A stretch of 64,000 nucleotides of DNA, taken from IMG/VR virus record IMGVR_UViG_3300017917_002374, positions 248,001 through 312,000 of that record; one strand, given 5' to 3'. Of the stretch, positions 13,318 through 21,700 are shown one piece after another; within the stretch, counting starts at the first letter, position 1; every line of letters starts with the position of its first letter. The notes beneath the pieces were generated by a model. The model was not told the DNA's origin, made no database searches, and was given only the letters and a program-made list of their open reading frames with translations. A program made the position numbers and the translations under genes.

Positions 13318-14723
13318 TAGTTATCTGCCTTTGGTGTTAGTGCCTTGCTCAAGCTCACACGTTCGGTCACCACATTGCCATTGGCATTGGTCCATGTGGT
13401 TGCGTTGTTTACAAAACCGCTTCGTTGAGTCTTGTTATCTGCGGCACCTGGTGTAAGGTTGGTTCTCACGCTGTCTTCAATTTTAACCCACTTGCTGCCA
13501 TTGTATCTAAAAAGTCTATTAGGCACAAAGTCTAACCTTAAAAAATAATCGCCTGATTTTGCATTGGCAGGGAATGCGATCCCCATGCTGATGTCAATTC
13601 CATTTGGAGCAGTACCGTCACCGGTCATGTAACCTTGTACTTTAGAATCAGGTGCAGCATTTCCGCTTGAACTGTTAAGAACTATACTCTTGCGCAGAGT
13701 TATTATTTCGCCGCTGGCAATAGTGATGTTACTGCTGAGTATGATTCCAGAATTGCCAATGATTCCGGTGACAGTTATACCAGCATTGGCAAGAATATTT
13801 GCAGAGCTAACCGTAGCGCCAACAATAGCTGCGCGAGCATTACCAACCAAGATTCTATTAGAATTGATTCTCGTACTGGATGCGATTAAATTGATAATGC
13901 TTGCACCGGACGCATCAATGTTTCCGGTGGCAACATTCTGTCCACTAGGTGCAGTCAGTTGTCCAGTAACCCCTCTAGTGACCACATATAAATTGGCATT
14001 ATTATACCCACTCTTAGGCAATTCAATTTCTGCCTGCGCAAGGATATTTTCGTTAATATCAAGATATTTTTGATAGGTACTGACCACATCACCAATGCTG
14101 GTAGCGTTGGCATTGGCAGTAAATGGATCGCTGTCGGCGGCAATTTTGTCCAGTATGTCTTTGTATTCCTGGCTGTCTACCAACGGTTGTAGTTTAACAC
14201 GCCAAAGGTGTGGATACCAAGTTGGTGAGAACCCTTCTGCTGCCCACGATGCATCAGTTACCACATAGTAGCGTTTGATTGCAAATGGCACACTTTGATC
14301 CAGTGCATGATAATCTTTAAGATGCATGAGCTCTAGTACATCACCTGCAACGATCTTTCGCCCTACAGTTTCTACCATGTCATTCAAGTGGAAGGTCATA
14401 AACTGAGTGCCAGCAGCTAAGAATATACCAAACTGACTTAGATCAAAATCCTGATCCTGCTTTTGATAAATGCCTCGCAGATTGTAGATATCTGGATCGT
14501 ATTTGCGATCACGATTTTCTAAAAACAGTAGATCTTGAATGTTTAACTCGCTCTGATTAGCATATTCAGGTTTGGTAGCATCTGTACCAGCGCCGTTTGC
14601 TGGCCCAAGATACTTGTGCAAATGAATGCCGGTACCGCCCACAGTGAACATTTCGCTGATTCTGCGATCCAGGAACTGGTAATCGTTACCTTTATTTTCA
14701 CGCCATAGGCTCAAACGTGGCAT
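13317..14723 (-). CDS. Neck/head-closure protein, T4 gp14-like
   Basis: ATG at 14723 (MPRLSLWR) after late motif GCTAAATA; DLSQFGIFL...GDVLEL pattern; synteny with gp13/gp15. Confidence 0.65.
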   Translation of the reverse strand: MPRLSLWRENKGNDYQFLDRRISEMFTVGGTGIHLHKYLGPANGAGTDATKPEYANQSELNIQDLLFLENRDRKYDPDIYNLRGIYQKQDQDFDLSQFGIFLAAGTQFMTFHLNDMVETVGRKIVAGDVLELMHLKDYHALDQSVPFAIKRYYVVTDASWAAEGFSPTWYPHLWRVKLQPLVDSQEYKDILDKIAADSDPFTANANATSIGDVVSTYQKYLDINENILAQAEIELPKSGYNNANLYVVTRGVTGQLTAPSGQNVATGNIDASGASIINLIASSTRINSNRILVGNARAAIVGATVSSANILANAGITVTGIIGNSGIILSSNITIASGEIITLRKSIVLNSSSGNAAPDSKVQGYMTGDGTAPNGIDISMGIAFPANAKSGDYFLRLDFVPNRLFRYNGSKWVKIEDSVRTNLTPGAADNKTQRSGFVNNATTWTNANGNVVTERVSLSKALTPKADN

Positions 14724-14763: not shown

Positions 14764-14792
14764 TTGACAACATAGCCCAATTGTTTTATAAT
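14764..14792 (+). promoter_or_regulatory. Perfect sigma70 promoter (early)
   Basis: TTGACA-17 bp-TATAAT, followed by AGGAG RBS and ATG 14822. Confidence 0.9.
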
Positions 14793-14821: not shown

Positions 14822-16036
14822 ATGGCTACCAAAGCTGTTGCAAAAAAAGCAAATGCACCTGTTGCAAAAAAAGCAAGTGTGCCCGCTGCAAAAAAGAGCA
14901 GCGTCCGCCGCAAGCATTTACCGGACGAAAAGTACACCGGCAGCGAGCCGCAGTGGGATACAGAACTAGCACTCAAAATGACAGATGAGGAGTTTGATCA
15001 TCATCTGCGACGCAGTTTTTATTTTTACAACTATCATTATGCAGTTAAAGATCTCAAGCCCGAATTTGTTAAATGGCTGCAAGAACAAAAACATTTTGAA
15101 ATCAGCAAAGCAGATCTCAGCAAGATCATAAAAAGTCGTTGGGTGCCCATGACAGCTTGTAGTCTGGTCATGGCCCATGGCATGGGCATGCCACTGCGCG
15201 GTCGCACTCTTGAATATCTCAAAAACAGTGTACAGGAAGTGTGCCTGAAGTACGATTACTATAAAGAAGGTGACGACGAGCAGCCTGAGGTTGTAGTGCC
15301 CACAGCACCGTCCAAAGTGCCTACTATTCAAGATCGTTTGAACGAACGCACTAGCGAACTGTTAGGCGAGCTTGAAGGACACTATGATGAAGTATGCGAG
15401 GGTAAAACCACGTTTGATCATTACAAGTTTTTGGTTTCCAACAATGTGGTACAAGGGCAGTTGATCAAATACGAAACCTTGTACATGACAAGAAAGGTTG
15501 AACTGGATGCTGCCTACAATGGAGCAGATGCTGATCTAGTGGAAGCCTACAAACACTATAAAGCAGCTGATTGGAAGCGAATTTTTGCCTGGATAGACGG
15601 TCTGCTTACTGCAATTGAACAGTACCGTGGAGTTAAAAAAGCCAGTAAAAAAGCCAGAGTTAAGAAAGCTCCTAGCAAAGAAAAGCTGGTGAGCAAACTC
15701 AAGTATTGTAAAGATTTTCCTCAACTGAAAGTGGTAAGTATCAACCCTGCAGAAATAGTTGGAGCACAAGAGCTTTGGGTGTACAACACCAAGACTCGCA
15801 AGCTGGGCAAATACATAGCCAGCAACAGCGATGGCTTTGCTGTTAAAGGTACCACAATTGAAAACTTTACAGACAAGAGTGTGAGCAAGACTCTGCGCAA
15901 GCCTGAGCAACAACTGTTGGAATTTACCAAAAGTACCAAGGTACAACTGCGTAAATTTTTAGAAAGCATCAAAGCCACAGAAACCTTGCTTAACGGACGT
16001 ATTAACACTGACACTGTGCTACTGCGAGTACTGTAA
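14822..16036 (+). CDS. Early hypothetical protein (404 aa) with Lys/Ala-rich N-terminal tail
   Basis: Long ORF with strong promoter and RBS; AKK repeats at the N-terminus; function not recognised. Confidence 0.8.
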   Translation: MATKAVAKKANAPVAKKASVPAAKKSSVRRKHLPDEKYTGSEPQWDTELALKMTDEEFDHHLRRSFYFYNYHYAVKDLKPEFVKWLQEQKHFEISKADLSKIIKSRWVPMTACSLVMAHGMGMPLRGRTLEYLKNSVQEVCLKYDYYKEGDDEQPEVVVPTAPSKVPTIQDRLNERTSELLGELEGHYDEVCEGKTTFDHYKFLVSNNVVQGQLIKYETLYMTRKVELDAAYNGADADLVEAYKHYKAADWKRIFAWIDGLLTAIEQYRGVKKASKKARVKKAPSKEKLVSKLKYCKDFPQLKVVSINPAEIVGAQELWVYNTKTRKLGKYIASNSDGFAVKGTTIENFTDKSVSKTLRKPEQQLLEFTKSTKVQLRKFLESIKATETLLNGRINTDTVLLRVL

Positions 16037-16040
16037 GTCC

Positions 16041-16076
16041 AAACCCCCGTTTGCATAAATACTGCAACGGGGGTTT
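16041..16076 (+). promoter_or_regulatory. Hairpin with late promoter in its loop and RBS in its 3' arm
   Basis: AAACCCCCGT(T)TGCA-TAAATAC-TGCAACGGGGGTTT, ATG at 16080. Confidence 0.8.
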
Positions 16077-16079
16077 CTT

Positions 16080-17213
16080 ATGGCCACATTAAAGCCAGGA
16101 CTGAATTCTAAACAACACTTGATCACTGACAGCTTGGGCACACCAGGTCCAATAGCCTACGATGAAACACAGTACGACAGCGTGGCCAAAAAACGCAAAG
16201 AAATAGAAGACTACGTGCGTTTTCGTTTGGGCGATGGCATGGTTGATGTTGAACTGGATCCAGATCATTATAGAGTAGCTATTGATAGAGCTCTGCTGCG
16301 CTATCGTCAACGTGCTGGAAATGGCGAAGAAGAAAGTTATGCGTTTCTAGAACTTTTACCAGAAACACAAGAATACATTCTGCCAGAAGAAGTCATGACT
16401 GTACGACAGATATTCCGTAGAGGCATTGGTAGTGTAACAGGAACCACAGCTAGCCAATTTGAACCGTTTGCGTCCGGGTACTTAAACACATACATGTTGG
16501 TGGCTGGACGTGTGGGTGGATTGCTCAGTTACGAACTGTTTAGCCAATACCAAGAACTGGCCATGCGCATGTTTGGCGGACACATGAATTTTACTTGGAA
16601 TCCAATGAGCAAAAAGCTCACACTGATTCGCAAGATTCCCGAAACAGGTCATGTGTACAAGCGAATAAGTACTCTTACTGCCAGTGGTACCACAGTTGGA
16701 AGCACAATCACTGTTACATTCTCTGATCCTTGGGAAGAAATTGTGGTTGGTGGAACTTTGGTTATTGCCAACTGTCCGGTTACCGGATACAACAATGCCT
16801 ATGAAGTTCTTACTGTGGACAATGACAGCAAGGTGTTTACTGTGGAGGCACTGAGCAATCTTGGTTCCACTGCGGTAACAGGCAGCAATCGTGATCGCAC
16901 CAGAGCCTACAGTCCACTTACTGATGATCCTGCCGAAACAGTTTTGTTGCATATCTATAATAAGAAACCAGACAGCATGCTGTTGAATGACAGTAGAATT
17001 TTTCCATGGCTACAAGACTACGCACTGGCAGTTGCTAAAGACATGTTGGGTCAGGCTCGCGAAAAGTTTGCTACCATAGCAGGCCCACAAGGTGGTACTC
17101 AGCTGAACGGCGGCGCATTAAAAACCGAGGCTAAAGCAGAAATGGAAGCTCTTGAAGAAGAACTCAAGCGTTTTTACGATGGCAGTATGCCTTACACTTG
17201 GGTAATTGGATAA
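16080..17213 (+). CDS. Neck protein, T4 gp13-like, with inserted beta domain
   Basis: LGDGMVDVELD..HY..AID and C-terminal W...YALA..K..LG..R.KF...GP.GG.QLNG..L..EA..E...LE motifs. Confidence 0.85.
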   Translation: MATLKPGLNSKQHLITDSLGTPGPIAYDETQYDSVAKKRKEIEDYVRFRLGDGMVDVELDPDHYRVAIDRALLRYRQRAGNGEEESYAFLELLPETQEYILPEEVMTVRQIFRRGIGSVTGTTASQFEPFASGYLNTYMLVAGRVGGLLSYELFSQYQELAMRMFGGHMNFTWNPMSKKLTLIRKIPETGHVYKRISTLTASGTTVGSTITVTFSDPWEEIVVGGTLVIANCPVTGYNNAYEVLTVDNDSKVFTVEALSNLGSTAVTGSNRDRTRAYSPLTDDPAETVLLHIYNKKPDSMLLNDSRIFPWLQDYALAVAKDMLGQAREKFATIAGPQGGTQLNGGALKTEAKAEMEALEEELKRFYDGSMPYTWVIG

Positions 17214-17593
17214 TGAAGATAAGAGAAATTATTACTGAAGTACGAGCTGGTGACATACCTGACAATTTTAAACAGTCAAGTGCTGGCTTGCATACATTTA
17301 GTGATGCAGAAAGAGCCAATACAGACTACACTCACTACAGATTGGGATTGGCTTTGGCATGTGCAGATGGTAAAGGGCAGCTGATTGACATGGATCCAAA
17401 AACCTTTTATGGTAAGAAACACACTGCACATCCTTATACCAAAGAAGAAGAAGACATGCTCAAACAAAGCTACAAACTGGTTGGAGCAAACTATAAAGAC
17501 CTTAACAAAGGTAATTTGAATAGTATGGAAATAAGCGATACTAATAAAGTAAGCCCAACAGCCAAACCTAAGAAAAACAAATACGGTGTTTGA
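17213..17593 (+). CDS. Hypothetical protein (126 aa), capsid-targeting-like N-terminus
   Basis: TAATG coupling to the gp13 stop; starts MKIREIITE. Confidence 0.7.
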   Translation: MKIREIITEVRAGDIPDNFKQSSAGLHTFSDAERANTDYTHYRLGLALACADGKGQLIDMDPKTFYGKKHTAHPYTKEEEDMLKQSYKLVGANYKDLNKGNLNSMEISDTNKVSPTAKPKKNKYGV

Positions 17594-17618
17594 CCACCGA
17601 AGCAGTTTAGTTTATAAT
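17590..17618 (+). promoter_or_regulatory. sigma70-type early promoter
   Basis: TTGACC-17 bp-TATAAT upstream of dNMP kinase. Confidence 0.8.
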
Positions 17619-17639
17619 GCCCCTAAGGGGGCATTTTTT
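17616..17639 (+). terminator. Intrinsic terminator overlapping the early promoter
   Basis: AATGCCCC-TAAG-GGGGCATT followed by a T run. Confidence 0.7.
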
Positions 17640-18332
17640 ATGATCATAGGCATATCAGGATTTATTGGATCAGGCAAAGACACCGCAGCAAACTACTTGG
17701 TGGGCTTTCATGGATTTAGACGCGACAGTTTTGCAGGTGCGCTCAAGGATGCAGTTGCTACTGTGTTTGGGTGGGACAGAGAACTACTAGAAGGGCTTAC
17801 ACCTGAGAGCCGGGCCTGGCGAGAGCAAGTGGACACATGGTGGAGCAAACGGTTGGACATGCCGCATTTAACTCCTCGTTGGGTGTTACAACATTGGGGT
17901 ACTGAAGTTTGTCGTCAAGGGTTTCATGATGATATTTGGATTGCTGCACTTGAAAATCGTCTACGGCAACGTACCGGAAACACTGTGATAACAGATGTAC
18001 GTTTTCCTAACGAAATTAAAGCTATTCGTCGTGCTGGGGGTACTCTTTGCTGGGTCAAACGCGGATCCTTGCCCGAGTGGTACGAAACTGCACTGCTAGA
18101 AAATACCACACCTCTGGACAAGCAGTGGCTTCTAGAAGATGCGCATCAACTGATGCCACAAAAGTATCCTCGGGTGCATGCCAGCGAGTGGGCTTGGGTG
18201 GGTACACAATTTGACTACGAAATTGACAATAATGGCTCAGTTGAACAACTGTATGATCAACTTAAAAGTTTGGTTAATCCTCAGCGGCCCGCCACGGTAA
18301 ACGCTCTAGATATAATACTTTCTGGCAGTTAA
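17640..18332 (+). CDS. Deoxynucleoside monophosphate kinase (T4 gp1-like)
   Basis: MIIGISGFIGSGKDT P-loop, SFAGALKD, TPRWVLQHWGTEVCR, ITDVRFPNE, HASE motifs. Confidence 0.92.
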   Translation: MIIGISGFIGSGKDTAANYLVGFHGFRRDSFAGALKDAVATVFGWDRELLEGLTPESRAWREQVDTWWSKRLDMPHLTPRWVLQHWGTEVCRQGFHDDIWIAALENRLRQRTGNTVITDVRFPNEIKAIRRAGGTLCWVKRGSLPEWYETALLENTTPLDKQWLLEDAHQLMPQKYPRVHASEWAWVGTQFDYEIDNNGSVEQLYDQLKSLVNPQRPATVNALDIILSGS

Positions 18333-18615: not shown

Positions 18616-18718
18616 ACGGTATTTATATACTAAACCTTTGCAAAGGGCAGTCTAGCAGCCCAAAAATGTCAGTTCCAAATAAATATCTATAACATGATTT
18701 TTGTCAAAGGAAAATAAC

Positions 18719-21700
18719 ATGGCAACTTTAGTTTCTCCAGGTCTTAGTGTAACAGTAACCGATGAAAGCCAATATGTACCAGGCGGTCCAGGAACCGTTC
18801 CGTTGGTAATTTTAGCAACTGCACAAGACAAAACTTCACCAAGTGGTGGCACCGCTACTGGCACCACAGCAGCCAGAGCAAATACTCTACAAGCATTTGG
18901 CAGTCAGCGCGAGCTGATCACAGCCATGGGATATCCCGTATTTAAAACTGCGGCTGGCAGTCCTGTACATGGCGACGAACAAAACGAATATGGATTGCAA
19001 GCAGCTTACAGTGCAATGGGCCTTGGTAACAGATGTTTTGTACTAAGAGCTGATATTGACCTCGATCAACTTACACCTACTGGAGTAAGACCAAAAGGCA
19101 ACGTTGATGATGGTTTCTACTGGTTTGATCTTACCACATCTGACTTTGGTATATTCCAGTGGAATGCATCAACACAGACTTTTACAAAACAAACAGTAAC
19201 CGTTCTAACTTCAACCGCAGACGTAAATTCTCCTGGCGGCGCCGGAGAACCATTTACTCCAAAAGACAGTGTGGGAGAAATTGGCAGTTATGCAGTAATC
19301 GCAGTAGACGACGACAATCCTCTATTTTATAAAAATGCAGACAATGCCTGGGTAGCTGTTGGATCAAAAGATTGGCAGAAGGCCTGGCCTACTGTGCAAA
19401 GTTCATATGCAACTTATGCCGGAAATGAAGTAGCAGCAGGTACTCAAGTTACTATTAATACTGTTACTGTAACAATCACAGCAGCAGGTGCGACAGCAAC
19501 AGGAACAGAAGTAGTAACTGCAATTAATGCGGCGTTCGCTGCCAACTACGGCGACGGTATCCGTGCTGAAATTGATACCAACGGAAGACTGATCATTCGC
19601 GCTACATCAGACGCAGCAAGCGATGGTAGCACAGCTGACGGTAAAGTGGTTATTGTTGACGATGCTGGTGCTGCTGACTTAGGATTAGATGGCGGTATTG
19701 AAGCGTTTGCTCCAATTCTTGATTTTGGAAAATACACAGAGGTACCAACCTTTGCAGCGTCTGAAGCCACTCCAGCACCAACTGGTAGTATTTGGGTAAA
19801 AACTTCTGTAGTAGGCAGCGGTGCTAACTGGGTAGTAAAAAGATTCAACGCATCAACTGGTGCATTTGCTACCATGGCAGCTCCGATCTACGAAGACAAA
19901 GCATCGGCCATCTATGGACTAGATCCATTAGGCGGTGGATTTAATCTAGCGGTAGGCACACTGTATGTTGACTATTCAACACTAACTGATTTTCCTGGTA
20001 CATTTAAAATTTGGCGTCGTTACAAGAGTGGCGTAACCAAGGTTACTGGATCAGTACCTGCTAATGCAAATCCATTCACCATTGGGCATACTTTTAAACT
20101 GGCTGTGACACAGCCTGAGCAAAGTACCATTGATGAATACACATTTACTATTGCTGAAACCAGTGTAGACGGTTTTGTAAAACTAATACTTGGTAAAGCC
20201 ATTCCAAATGTGTTTGCATCAAAAGAAAGTTCAGGTGCAATCAGTATCACGCACAAAGCAGGCGGAGATATCTATCTAGTAGATACTACCGCAGGGGTTG
20301 GTAATCCATTGACCAACGCTGGTTTCACCAGCAGCACCAGTGGTATTCTTGTAGAAACAGTTGGAACATATTCAGGATCTTTACTGGCCACAAACTGGTC
20401 TGTACTAGACTACACTTACAGCACTGAAGAGCCTTATGTGGCCCCTGCTGATGGTACACTATGGTACTATGGTAGTGCTGTAGAAGCAGATGTGTTAATT
20501 TGCAGTACCACTGGCTGGAAGGGATATCGCACAGTGTCAAGTGACGCTCGCGGTTATAATCTAACTCTTACAGATCCAAATGGTCCAATTTTTTCTGCTT
20601 CAAGACCAACACTACAAAGCGACGAGACAGCTCTTGTGGCAGGCGACTTGTGGGTTGACACCAGCGATTTAGAAAACTATCCTGTGATCTACAGATACAA
20701 CGGCAGCAAGTGGGTAGCCATAGATAACACAGATACCATTACTCAAAACGGTATTCTATTCGCAGACGCACGTTGGGACGCAGATGTTGATGGCAGCGGT
20801 GACAGTATTGGTGGTATCGTTGATCCAATCAGTGGCGACCTGCCAGAGATAGCAACCATGCTGTTGAGCAACTACACTGACTTAGATTGCCCAGACTATC
20901 GTTTGTATCCACGTGGTACCATTCTATGGAACACACGTCGCAACGGATTCAACGTCAAACAATATGTAAGCCAAGCATTTACAGAAGACGCTTATCCAGA
21001 TGCAGATGCCAACAGCGGAAACAATCTGGTTGGAGAAATTCCTGACATCACAGCAACTTGGGTAACTGCTAGTGGCAACCAAGATGACGGAAGTCCTTAC
21101 ATGGGACACAAAGCTCAACGTCGTATGGTAGTCAAAGCACTACGTGCGGCAGTTGACAGCAACACACAGATACGTGAAGAACAGTTCACTTTCAATCTGA
21201 TTGCTTGCCCAGGATATCCAGAGCTGTTGTCAAACATGACAGCATTAAACAATGATCGTGCAAACACTGCATTTATCATTGGCGACACTCCATTGGATCT
21301 GGTTCCAGACACAATTGAGTTAACCAACTGGAGCAATAATGTTGCTACCACTGCTGACATCTATACAGGCCTGTTCTATCCGGCAGGGTTAACAAATGAC
21401 CTAGATGGCAACGAAGTTGTGGTACCTGCAAGTCACATGGCATTAAGAGCTTTGATTCGTAACGATCAAATTGCTTACCAGTGGTTTGCCCCAGCAGGCG
21501 CACGTCGTGGATTGATTGACAATGCCACAGCAGTAGGATATCTAGACTATACCACAGGATTGTTCACTAAGATTGGTGTACGTCAAAGTCTGCGTGACAC
21601 GCTGTACACTTTAAGAGTGAATCCTGTTGCAAACTTACCTGGTTTAGGACTGGCTATTTTTGGACAAAAGACTCGTAGTCCAATTGCACAAAGCACAGAC

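What the first reader, a model, noticed from the sequence alone, without database searches (positions are those of the whole stretch)
16041..16082. Late promoter inside a hairpin loop that sequesters the gp13 ribosome-binding site
Seen: a 14-bp inverted repeat whose loop is TAAATAC and whose 3' arm contains the only SD-like run (GGGGG, 16069-16073) before ATG 16080; the upstream gene is driven by a perfect sigma70 promoter. Established: T4 genes e, soc, 49 and I-TevI are silenced on early read-through transcripts by a stem that late-initiated transcripts lack. Inference: the same temporal switch (terminator plus translational block) is applied here to a neck gene.
Basis: partly seen in the sequence, partly recalled or inferred. 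Interest (0 to 1): 0.6.

Follow-up and report, generated by a model that had tools for sequence, protein, structure and literature searches.

The report
Late promoter nested in RBS-hiding hairpin
In a 355-kb uncultured jumbo phage, the 43-base gap before the neck gene folds into a conserved hairpin that holds a late promoter and hides the gene's ribosome-binding site. This is the T4 way of keeping a late gene silent on early transcripts, here found across a whole group of jumbo phages but not yet tested by experiment.

Summary
A 14-bp stem with one bulge (16041-16055 / 16063-16076) has the loop TAAATAC, and GGGGG (16069-16073) lies in the 3' arm. It is followed by UUUCUU and ATG 16080. A perfect TTGACA-17-TATAAT stands before the upstream gene.

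The interpretation passes every sequence-level test I could run:
- TAAATA is this phage's late-promoter core. Of 187 copies, 34% lie 10-40 nt before a gene start, and the genome encodes a gp55-like sigma factor.
- All 15 metagenomic relatives keep a hairpin of -17 to -26 kcal/mol with differing, compensating stems. They also keep an invariant TAAATA, an 18-21 nt gap to the ATG and a purine-rich SD in the 3' arm.
- Nine cultured Rak2-like phages (including GAP32, CBB, XaC1 and EJP2) show the same design, with TAAATA in the 5' arm.
- Opening the ribosome-binding region is predicted to cost 12-21 kcal/mol on read-through RNA and 1-8 kcal/mol on the predicted late RNA.

The U-tract is missing in some lineages, so hiding the ribosome-binding site, not termination, is the constant feature. 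No RNA data exist, so the function remains inferred. This is a new member of the T4 e/soc/49/I-TevI kind, of moderate interest.

The parts
14764..14792 (+). Consensus sigma70-type (early-type) promoter TTGACA-17-TATAAT of the upstream gene
   Evidence: scores it 12 of 12. The same consensus (11-12 of 12) stands before the homologous gene in 12 of 13 relatives where the region is held. PA5oct has a similar TTGACA promoter before its homologue.
14822..16036 (+). Upstream 404-aa gene of unknown function (PHROG 11903) with a Lys/Ala-rich N-terminus; source of possible read-through transcripts
   Evidence: The PA5oct homologue gp292 sits directly before the gp13 homologue. It carries no virion mass-spectrometry note, whereas the next three genes do.
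16031..16037 (+). 5' side of an optional lower helix (CUGUAAG, includes the upstream stop codon) that pairs with 16077-16083
   Evidence: MFE structure. It is only weakly conserved in relatives.
16041..16055 (+). 5' arm of the hairpin (C-rich, complementary to the SD-like run); absent from any transcript started at the internal promoter
   Evidence: Its sequence differs in every relative, while pairing is kept.
16054..16061 (+). Late-promoter element CATAAATA (core TAAATA 16056-16061) in the hairpin loop
   Evidence: TAAATA occurs 187 times in the genome, and 63 copies lie 10-40 nt upstream of a same-strand gene start, with a peak at 17-21 nt. Control hexamers give 1-8% (14% for ATAAAT, which overlaps the motif). 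TAAATA is invariant in all 13 distinct relatives. A gp55-like sigma factor is encoded. CBB's published Table S7 lists CTAAATA as the late promoter of its neck gene.
16063..16076 (+). 3' arm of the hairpin, carrying the SD-like run
16067..16067 (+). Predicted late transcription start (inferred, not measured): 6 nt after the last A of TAAATA, giving a 13-nt leader
   Evidence: Inferred from T4 late-promoter geometry (my own knowledge). The genome-wide peak of 17-21 nt between TAAATA and the ATG implies 12-16 nt leaders as the norm. The promoter element lies in the loop, so any start is 3' of the 5' arm.
16069..16073 (+). SD-like GGGGG, 6 nt before the ATG
   Evidence: The predicted duplex with the anti-SD is -9.3 kcal/mol. 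Every relative has a GGGG, GGGA, GAGG or AGGA core at the same place in the 3' arm.
16074..16079 (+). U-rich tract UUUCUU after the G+C-rich stem (terminator-like tail)
   Evidence: T-rich tails are present in 13 of 15 metagenomic relatives and most cultured ones, but absent in L013, L014, EJP2 and Hallingskeid.
16080..17213 (+). gp13-like neck / head-tail adaptor Ad2 gene (377 aa)
17590..17642 (+). Sister element at the next change of promoter type: TTGACC-17-TATAAT overlaps the 5' arm of the hairpin AATGCCCC/GGGGCATT (17616-17635), followed by U6 and the ATG (17640) of the dNMP kinase gene
   Evidence: It is conserved, with a changed but still pairing stem, in L002-L006. L007 and L013 keep a weaker stem.

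Best explanation
The 43-nt spacer between an early-type gene and the neck gene gp13 is a compact module with three overlapping functions that gates gp13 expression to late infection.

On transcripts that start at the sigma70-type promoter (14764-14792) and run through the 404-aa gene, the spacer folds into a G+C-rich hairpin. This has two effects. Together with the UUUCUU tail it stops part of the polymerases. On RNAs that read through, it pairs the SD-like GGGGG, and in the extended form the AUG, with the C-rich 5' arm, so ribosomes cannot start on gp13.

Late in infection, RNA polymerase carrying the phage's gp55-like sigma factor recognises CATAAATA in what would be the loop. It starts about 16067, inside the 3' arm. 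This 13-nt-leader mRNA lacks the 5' arm, so it is neither terminated nor folded shut, and gp13 is translated.

Shown here: the hairpin, its conservation by compensating changes, the genome-wide behaviour of the TAAATA motif, the sigma factor gene and the predicted accessibilities.
Inferred: promoter timing, the exact start site, termination efficiency and the translational block.
For: Hairpin:
- Stability is far beyond chance.
- All 15 metagenomic relatives (63-96% gp13 identity) fold to -17 to -26.5 kcal/mol.
- The stems are unrelated in L013, L014 and L016.
- The covariation score exceeds all 500 shuffles, and 8 of 15 pairs show changes on both sides.
- Nine cultured Rak2-like phages at about 40% gp13 identity keep an equivalent hairpin (-20.6 to -25.8 kcal/mol, z -4.5 to -7.9). 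In these, TAAATA lies in the 5' arm and GGGG or GAGG in the 3' arm.

Promoter:
- TAAATA is enriched 4- to 30-fold before gene starts at a fixed distance. NATAAATA precedes most large structural genes.
- The motif is invariant at 18-21 nt from the ATG in relatives.
- A gp55-like sigma factor is encoded (PHROG 12791, E = 6.6e-73; T4 gp55, E = 1.8e-6).
- The literature predicts the same motif for CBB and GAP32, including at the CBB neck gene.
- Control: the tail-sheath gene keeps AATAAATA in all relatives but has no hairpin.

Read-through source: the sigma70 consensus is conserved before the upstream gene.

Gating: opening positions -13 to +3 costs 12.3-20.7 kcal/mol in read-through RNA and 1.2-8.0 in the predicted late RNA, in all 13 distinct sequences.

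Constant feature: the U-tract is lost in four lineages, while the hairpin, the promoter and the SD in the arm persist.

A second site in the same genome has the same design, before a gene flanked by a sigma70-driven ClpP gene.

The T4 precedent is documented in PMC3014915.
Against: - No RNA evidence exists. All 20 public runs that hold the stretch are DNA metagenomes, and the laid contigs are uninformative.
- The timing of the sigma70-type promoter, the late start site and the termination are inferred from T4 rules.
- GGGGG is not the phage's usual SD (AGGAG/AAGGA).
- The upstream stop codon lies only 4 nt before the hairpin. A ribosome terminating there could melt the lower stem and permit some coupled initiation, or weaken termination (my inference).
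- If termination is efficient, hiding the ribosome-binding site adds little.
- The design is rare. Only 2 of 61 late promoters sit in a strong hairpin, so it is not how this phage generally runs late genes.
- PA5oct, Atu_ph07 and a Vibrio relative have the promoter motif but no hairpin.
Confidence: 0.62

Rival explanations
1. The element is simply a composite terminator plus promoter packed into a short spacer, like the PeSL cassettes of T4-like phages. The hairpin exists to terminate upstream transcription and protect the 3' end of the upstream mRNA. The promoter sits inside it only so that its own transcripts escape termination. Pairing of the SD would then be a by-product of crowding, with no regulatory role.
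For: - A G+C-rich stem followed by a T-rich tail is found in the window and in most relatives.
- PeSL stem-loops that overlap promoters are proven terminators, and were proposed to stop spill-over of early transcription into late virion genes (PMC2839356).
- Other late genes in this genome use a separate terminator followed by a late promoter, for example before window 7541 and 22799.
- The sister element at 17590-17642 follows the same logic with a sigma70 promoter.
Against: - L013, L014, EJP2 and Hallingskeid lack a U-tract yet keep the hairpin, the internal TAAATA and the SD in the arm.
- In all 22 sequences the G-rich, SD-like strand is the 3' arm, with a GGGG, GAGG or AGGA core 6-10 nt before the ATG. 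A plain terminator should not be constrained in this way.
- The simple terminator scan did not list the site, and ARNold did not call the CBB equivalent (Table S8).
Confidence: 0.25
2. The hairpin is an RNA element with another job. It could be a binding site for a phage translational repressor or nuclease, a processing site, or a stabiliser. In that case the loop sequence would be conserved for protein recognition and not as a promoter.
For: - The loop TAAATA(C) is invariant.
- T4 uses RNA operators at ribosome-binding sites (RegA, gp32, gp43; PMC3014915).
Against: - TAAATA behaves as a promoter element at about 60 other gene starts that have no hairpin.
- In cultured relatives the motif is paired inside the 5' arm and is not displayed in a loop, which argues against loop recognition.
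- No Rfam family matches.
Confidence: 0.06
3. The inverted repeat acts in DNA. Extruded as a cruciform or hairpin, it presents the late-promoter element single-stranded and so activates late transcription, in a phage group reported to lack gp33 and gp45 homologues.
For: - The promoter element sits in the loop in the window's clade.
- The CBB paper found no gp33 or gp45 homologues.
- Hairpin-form promoters are known for the phage N4 virion polymerase (my own knowledge).
Against: - Only 2 of 61 late promoters have such a repeat.
- In cultured relatives TAAATA is in the stem, which would hide it in a cruciform.
- G-U pairs are tolerated in several stems (L007-L010), which fits RNA and not DNA.
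Confidence: 0.04

Closest known systems
T4 genes e (lysozyme), soc, 49 and I-TevI: inhibitory hairpin over the ribosome-binding site on early and middle read-through transcripts, bypassed by late promoters inside the hairpin (review PMC3014915)
   Same: - A late gene lies downstream of an earlier-class transcription unit on the same strand.
- The SD and/or AUG is paired in a stem.
- A gp55-type late promoter is placed so that late transcripts lack the 5' strand.
- The structure is conserved among relatives. In the cultured Rak2-like phages the promoter lies in the 5' strand, as in T4 gene e.
   Different: - The phage lineage differs (a Rak2-like/PA5oct-related jumbo phage, about 355 kb).
- The gene is a core structural one (neck, gp13).
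- The promoter core is (A/C/G)TAAATA, looser than TATAAATA, and in the window's clade it sits in the loop.
- The stem usually carries a U-tract, so it probably also terminates.
- Nothing has been tested experimentally.
PeSL / PmSL composite promoter-terminator cassettes of T4-like phages (PMC2839356, PMC4122927)
   Same: - A stem-loop overlaps or abuts a promoter in a short spacer directly before an SD and ATG.
- The proposed role is to insulate downstream genes from upstream transcription.
- The sister element at 17590-17642 (a sigma70 promoter overlapping a hairpin) fits this description well.
   Different: - PeSLs use sigma70 or MotA-type promoters, not late ones.
- Their stem-loop lies at or upstream of the start site, and the SD is a separate downstream block, not part of the stem.
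- They are numerous, similar repeats that flank ORFans and drive recombination. Here there are two dissimilar copies (26 of 47 identical) at a conserved core-gene junction.
Predicted late promoters of Rak2-like phages (ATAAATA/CTAAATA/GTAAATA; CBB Table S7, GAP32)
   Same: It is the same motif class. CBB's Porf_201 (CTAAATATGATATA) is the element inside the CBB neck-gene hairpin.
   Different: That paper lists it only as a promoter. The table of 74 terminators has no entry after ORF 200, and the text passages I searched say nothing of a hairpin around it or of SD pairing.

Membership tests
T4-type RBS-sequestering hairpin with internal late promoter (e, soc, 49, I-TevI) | The gene lies co-oriented downstream of an earlier-class promoter whose transcripts can enter it | tested here: met
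   The consensus sigma70 promoter at 14764-14792 is conserved in 12 of 13 relatives. No other terminator-like site lies between it and 16041 on the + strand, apart from a weak one at 14495 upstream of the promoter. Actual timing was not measured.
T4-type RBS-sequestering hairpin with internal late promoter (e, soc, 49, I-TevI) | A stem pairs the Shine-Dalgarno sequence and/or the start codon | tested here: met
   All 17 positions from -14 to +3 are paired in the MFE. The predicted opening cost is 19.8 kcal/mol in the window and 12-21 in relatives.
T4-type RBS-sequestering hairpin with internal late promoter (e, soc, 49, I-TevI) | A late-promoter element is placed so that late transcripts lack the 5' strand | tested here: met
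   CATAAATA lies in the loop. The motif is validated genome-wide and is invariant in relatives. This is motif-level evidence only.
T4-type RBS-sequestering hairpin with internal late promoter (e, soc, 49, I-TevI) | A late 5' end is mapped inside the hairpin, and long transcripts are not translated while short ones are | not testable with these tools
   No RNA run holds the sequence. The phage is uncultured.
T4-type late promoter (gp55-dependent) | A TATAAATA-like -10 element without a -35, and a phage gp55-type sigma factor | tested here: met
   The motif matches 7 of 8 positions, and the core TAAATA is enriched before gene starts. A gp55-like ORF lies at G000:C1:224261-225109. The co-activators gp33 and gp45 were not searched for.
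Intrinsic (Rho-independent) terminator | A G+C-rich stem immediately followed by a U-tract | tested here: inconclusive
   The stem has 8 G-C pairs and the tail is UUUCUU. It was not listed by the consensus scan because of the bulge. The U-tract is strong in most relatives but absent in L013, L014, EJP2 and Hallingskeid. 3' ends were not measurable.
PeSL promoter-early stem-loop cassette | The promoter part is a sigma70-type early promoter | tested here: not met
   The scan found no sigma70-like site on the + strand in 16000-16080. The element is late-type.
PeSL promoter-early stem-loop cassette | Many similar copies flank variable ORFans and serve as recombination sites | tested here: not met
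   The covariance model R1 finds only one further match (L017:4092-4137, 23.6 bits) in the 91 kb searched. That copy is 26 of 47 identical. The site is a conserved core-gene junction.

The most novel reading that the evidence does not exclude
The gp13 junction hairpin may be an ancient regulatory module specific to this clade. It has been kept since before the split of the enterobacterial Rak2-like phages from this freshwater/soil lineage. That would imply that premature neck-protein synthesis is specifically harmful in these jumbo phages. Alternatively, the inverted repeat may also act in DNA, presenting the late promoter to a gp55-type polymerase that lacks the T4 co-activators.
Probability: 0.12. 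Interest if true: 0.6.

Novelty: new member of a known kind. Interest (0 to 1): 0.4.

Why it matters
It extends a classic T4 control device to a distant and poorly studied family-level group of jumbo phages. The device lets one sequence terminate or silence early transcripts and launch translatable late ones. The finding shows that the device has been kept by selection at one particular junction, before the neck gene.

It gives annotators of Rak2-like genomes a concrete rule: an (A/C/G)TAAATA late promoter 17-37 nt before the ATG, sometimes nested in a hairpin. It also names cultured phages (GAP32, CBB, XaC1, EJP2 on E. coli) where the mechanism can be tested directly.

As a 40-nt part that insulates adjacent genes of different timing, it is also of some use for phage engineering.

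Tried and rejected
- blastn of the region against cultured phages found nothing. Relatives were reachable only through protein searches.
- MAFFT plus RNAalifold gave no consensus structure, because bulges put the arms out of register. I re-aligned with a covariance model instead. That alignment includes two spurious minus-strand rows and is fitted to the model, so its counts lean towards the structure.
- Hypothesis rejected: nesting in a hairpin is the general late-promoter design. Only 2 of 61 are strong cases, and weaker ones exceed shuffles only modestly.
- Hypothesis rejected: sigma70 promoters are generally nested in hairpins that cover the ribosome-binding site. Only 2 of 34 are.
- The second in-genome instance (before the SprT-like gene) could not be compared. 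Neither it nor its upstream neighbour has relatives in the viral contig collection.
- The Pfam Sigma70_r2 search found no sigma factor. The gp55-like gene was found with T4 gp55 and PHROG 12791.
- The search for RNA evidence found only DNA metagenomes. Laying four of them (2,401 letters, within the operators' limit) showed no listed variants in 16041-16079 apart from one low-depth 1-nt deletion, and no compensatory microdiversity.
- An Atlas search for the function of the upstream 404-aa protein gave nothing. The PA5oct supplementary tables are not held.
- No transcriptome paper on Rak2-like phages turned up in the library.
- Complex prediction, structure prediction and the large protein searches were not used, because the claim does not rest on them.

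Full report
**Where we are.** The window is bases 248001-312000 of a 354,959-bp virus record with direct terminal repeats and 42.7% G+C. The gene after the finding (16080-17213, 377 aa) matches the head-tail adaptor Ad2 / T4 gp13 family (PHROG 211, E = 1e-32). By tblastn its nearest cultured relatives, at 38-49% identity, are the Rak2-like jumbo phages and their kin: XaC1, EJP2, GAP32, CBB, Serratia BF, PA5oct and Atu_ph07. Neighbouring genes are a gp15-like tail-sheath stabiliser, a dNMP kinase and an 1100-aa tail sheath. Public runs that hold near-identical DNA are pond, freshwater, lake and soil metagenomes. None is RNA.

**The observation.** It is exactly as described.
- The upstream ORF stops at 16034-16036.
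- The 5' arm is 16041-16055, the loop TAAATAC is 16056-16062, and the 3' arm is 16063-16076. The stem has 14 pairs and one bulged T.
- GGGGG lies at 16069-16073, followed by the tail UUUCUU and ATG 16080.
- The RNA fold is -25.7 kcal/mol against -13.2 +/- 2.7 for shuffles (z = -4.6, 0 of 200 as stable). It adds a lower helix that pairs the upstream stop-codon region (16031-16037) with CUUAUGG, which includes the gp13 AUG.
- Among my 413 crude gene calls this is the third most stable upstream region. Of the 45 most stable, it is the only one with every position from -14 to +3 paired.
- The perfect TTGACA-17-TATAAT is at 14764-14792.

**Is the loop motif a promoter?** Yes, as far as sequence can tell.
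- The hexamer TAAATA occurs 187 times on both strands. Of these, 63 (34%) lie 10-40 nt upstream of a gene start on the same strand, with a sharp peak at 17-21 nt. Control A+T hexamers give 1-8% (the overlapping ATAAAT gives 14%). The preceding base is A (47%), C (27%) or G (19%), rarely T.
- NATAAATA precedes most very large structural genes, including those of 2299, 2063, 1381, 1100 and 982 aa.
- The gap here is 18 nt, in the middle of that peak.
- The genome encodes a gp55-like late sigma factor (PHROG 12791, E = 6.6e-73; T4 gp55 itself matches at E = 1.8e-6).
- The CBB paper predicted ATAAATA as the late motif of CBB and GAP32 and noted a gp55-like gene (PMC5259590). Its Table S7 lists A-, C- and G-TAAATA variants, and names CTAAATATGATATA as the promoter of the CBB neck gene.

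**Is the hairpin selected?** Yes.
- The IMG/VR collection holds fifteen relatives with 63-96% gp13 identity. Every one has a hairpin of -16.9 to -26.5 kcal/mol at the same place, and TAAATA lies 18-21 nt before the ATG in all.
- TAAATA forms six of the seven invariant columns of the spacer alignment.
- The stems differ. The window has CCCCCG/CGGGGG, L003 and L006 have CCCCTG/CAGGGG, and L007-L010 have TCCCTGTGTGCA/TGCATACAGGGA. L013, L014 and L016 have unrelated stems: TCCGTATCAAG/CTTGGTACGGA, GTATCCTGTTTG/CAAACAGGATAC and GTCCTCAG/CTGAGGAC.
- On an alignment fitted by a covariance model, 8 of 15 pairs show changes on both sides. The covariation score (0.232) exceeds all 500 shuffles and all slid controls. 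The fitted alignment leans towards the structure and contains two spurious minus-strand rows.
- The strongest result came from cultured phages. XaC1, EJP2, GAP32, PHA46, Hallingskeid, XbC2, Serratia BF, CBB and fHe-Yen9-03 all have a hairpin of -20.6 to -25.8 kcal/mol (z -4.5 to -7.9) directly before their neck gene.
- In those phages TAAATA is part of the 5' arm (for example CCCCTAAATA pairing with TGTTTAGGGG) and the loop is 13-20 nt. This is the arrangement described for T4 gene e.
- In total, 22 distinct sequences have 22 different 5' arms and keep 11-17 pairs.
- PA5oct, Atu_ph07 and a Vibrio phage have TAAATA 24-41 nt upstream but no significant structure.

**What is constant and what is not.**
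- In all 22 sequences the 3' arm is the G-rich strand. It carries an SD-like core (GGGGG, GGGG, GGGA, GAGG or AGGA) about 6-10 nt before the ATG.
- The T-rich tail is present in most but missing in L013, L014, EJP2 and Hallingskeid. Termination is therefore a frequent but dispensable property, whereas pairing of the ribosome-binding site is universal.
- As a control, the tail-sheath gene keeps AATAAATA about 33 nt upstream in all relatives, with a normal AAGGAAA SD and no hairpin (-3 to -8 kcal/mol). The hairpin is thus not a general attribute of the promoter.
- Only two of the 61 late-promoter genes in the genome have a strong nested hairpin. About five have a separate terminator upstream.

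**Context that gives the logic.**
- The upstream 404-aa gene has the consensus sigma70 promoter in 12 of 13 relatives, and never a TAAATA. Its PA5oct homologue also has a TTGACA promoter, sits directly before the gp13 homologue and, unlike the next three genes, is not marked as found in virions. Early-type and late-type genes therefore abut on one strand.
- The next boundary, after gp13 and a 126-aa ORF and before the dNMP kinase gene, carries the mirror element. TTGACC-17-TATAAT has its -10 overlapping the 5' arm of a GC hairpin, followed by U6 and the ATG. It is conserved with a changed but pairing stem in L006, and more weakly in L007 and L013.
- The only other strong nested late promoter lies before a 161-aa SprT-like gene (G000:C1:26094-26134). 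That gene is followed by a perfect sigma70 promoter for a ClpP gene.
- The design thus appears where the promoter type changes between co-directional genes.

**Mechanism.**
- Because the promoter element lies in the loop (or in the 5' arm in cultured relatives), any transcript it starts lacks the 5' arm.
- By T4 geometry (my knowledge: the motif is centred near -10), the start is about 16067, giving a 13-nt leader. The genome-wide gap distribution implies 12-16 nt leaders as the rule.
- The predicted cost of opening positions -13 to +3 is 19.8 kcal/mol on a read-through RNA and 8.0 on the late RNA in the window. Across relatives the figures are 12.3-20.7 against 1.2-8.0.
- This is the behaviour documented for T4 genes e, soc, 49 and I-TevI, where the structure lowers lysozyme synthesis about 100-fold (PMC3014915).
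- The overlap of a terminator-like stem with a promoter resembles the PeSL cassettes. Those were also proposed to stop early transcription spilling into late virion genes (PMC2839356; PMC4122927). PeSLs, however, use sigma70 promoters, keep the SD outside the stem, and are abundant repeats.

**Weak points.**
- There is no RNA evidence of any kind.
- Promoter timing, the start site and termination are inferred.
- GGGGG is unusual beside the phage's common AGGAG/AAGGA, although its predicted anti-SD duplex is -9.3 kcal/mol.
- The stop codon is only 4 nt from the stem in the window, against 16-17 nt in L006-L010. A terminating ribosome could therefore open the lower stem (my inference).
- No Rfam family matches.

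**Verdict.** The element is a new member of the T4 class of late promoters nested in a hairpin that hides the ribosome-binding site. It usually doubles as a terminator, and it is conserved before the neck gene across Rak2-like jumbo phages. I found no description of it in the searched literature. Interest is moderate: the principle is classic, but its depth of conservation and its presence in cultured phages make it directly testable.

Noticed in passing
window 17590-17642: A sigma70-type promoter (TTGACC-17-TATAAT) has its -10 overlapping the 5' arm of a GC hairpin (AATGCCCC/GGGGCATT). U6 and the ATG of the dNMP kinase gene follow. A transcript from this promoter would start in the loop, so it would escape its own terminator. 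The element is conserved in relatives, with a different pairing stem in L006.
   Followed up: partly
G000:C1:26094-26137 (locus L017:4094-4137), outside the window: A second strong nested element: AAAGCCCTCCTCGGTG-TAAATA-CCAAGGGGGGCTTT, then CTTATG, before a 161-aa SprT-like gene (PF10263). The pattern GGGGG(N)TTTCTTATG occurs only at these two sites in the genome. The next gene (ClpP) has a perfect sigma70 promoter and its own hairpin covering the SD. No relatives were found for comparison.
   Followed up: partly
window 14822-16036: The 404-aa protein is of unknown function (PHROG 11903) and has a Lys/Ala-rich repeated N-terminus (AKKA-type). It has a conserved consensus sigma70 promoter. Homologues occur in PA5oct, Sinorhizobium phiM12-like, Stenotrophomonas and Caulobacter phages. 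The gene order with gp13 is conserved in PA5oct, where the protein was not detected in virions.
   Followed up: partly
G000:C1:224261-225109, outside the window: A gp55-like late sigma factor gene in a 297-aa ORF (PHROG 12791, E = 6.6e-73). The Pfam Sigma70_r2 model does not detect it.
   Followed up: yes
G000:C1:194894-213760 (minus strand), outside the window: A single open reading frame of about 6288 aa, preceded by a TAAATA 29 nt upstream. It is by far the largest ORF in the genome. It was not characterised.
   Followed up: no
window 18685-18721 and relatives: The tail-sheath gene is unusually long (1100 aa). Only residues 555-1099 match sheath families. It has a conserved AATAAATA about 33 nt upstream and a canonical AAGGAAA SD.
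   Followed up: partly
window 16041-16079 in four metagenomes (pond, freshwater, soil, lake): Near-identical strains occur in freshwater and soil samples from several studies. The spacer shows no listed substitutions, while the flanking coding sequence carries many, mostly spaced three bases apart.
   Followed up: partly
G000:C1 about 150000-152500, outside the window: Several of my crude ORF calls here overlap sequences with tRNA-like T-arm motifs (GGTTCGAATCC). This suggests a tRNA gene cluster. I did not scan it with ARAGORN.
   Followed up: no
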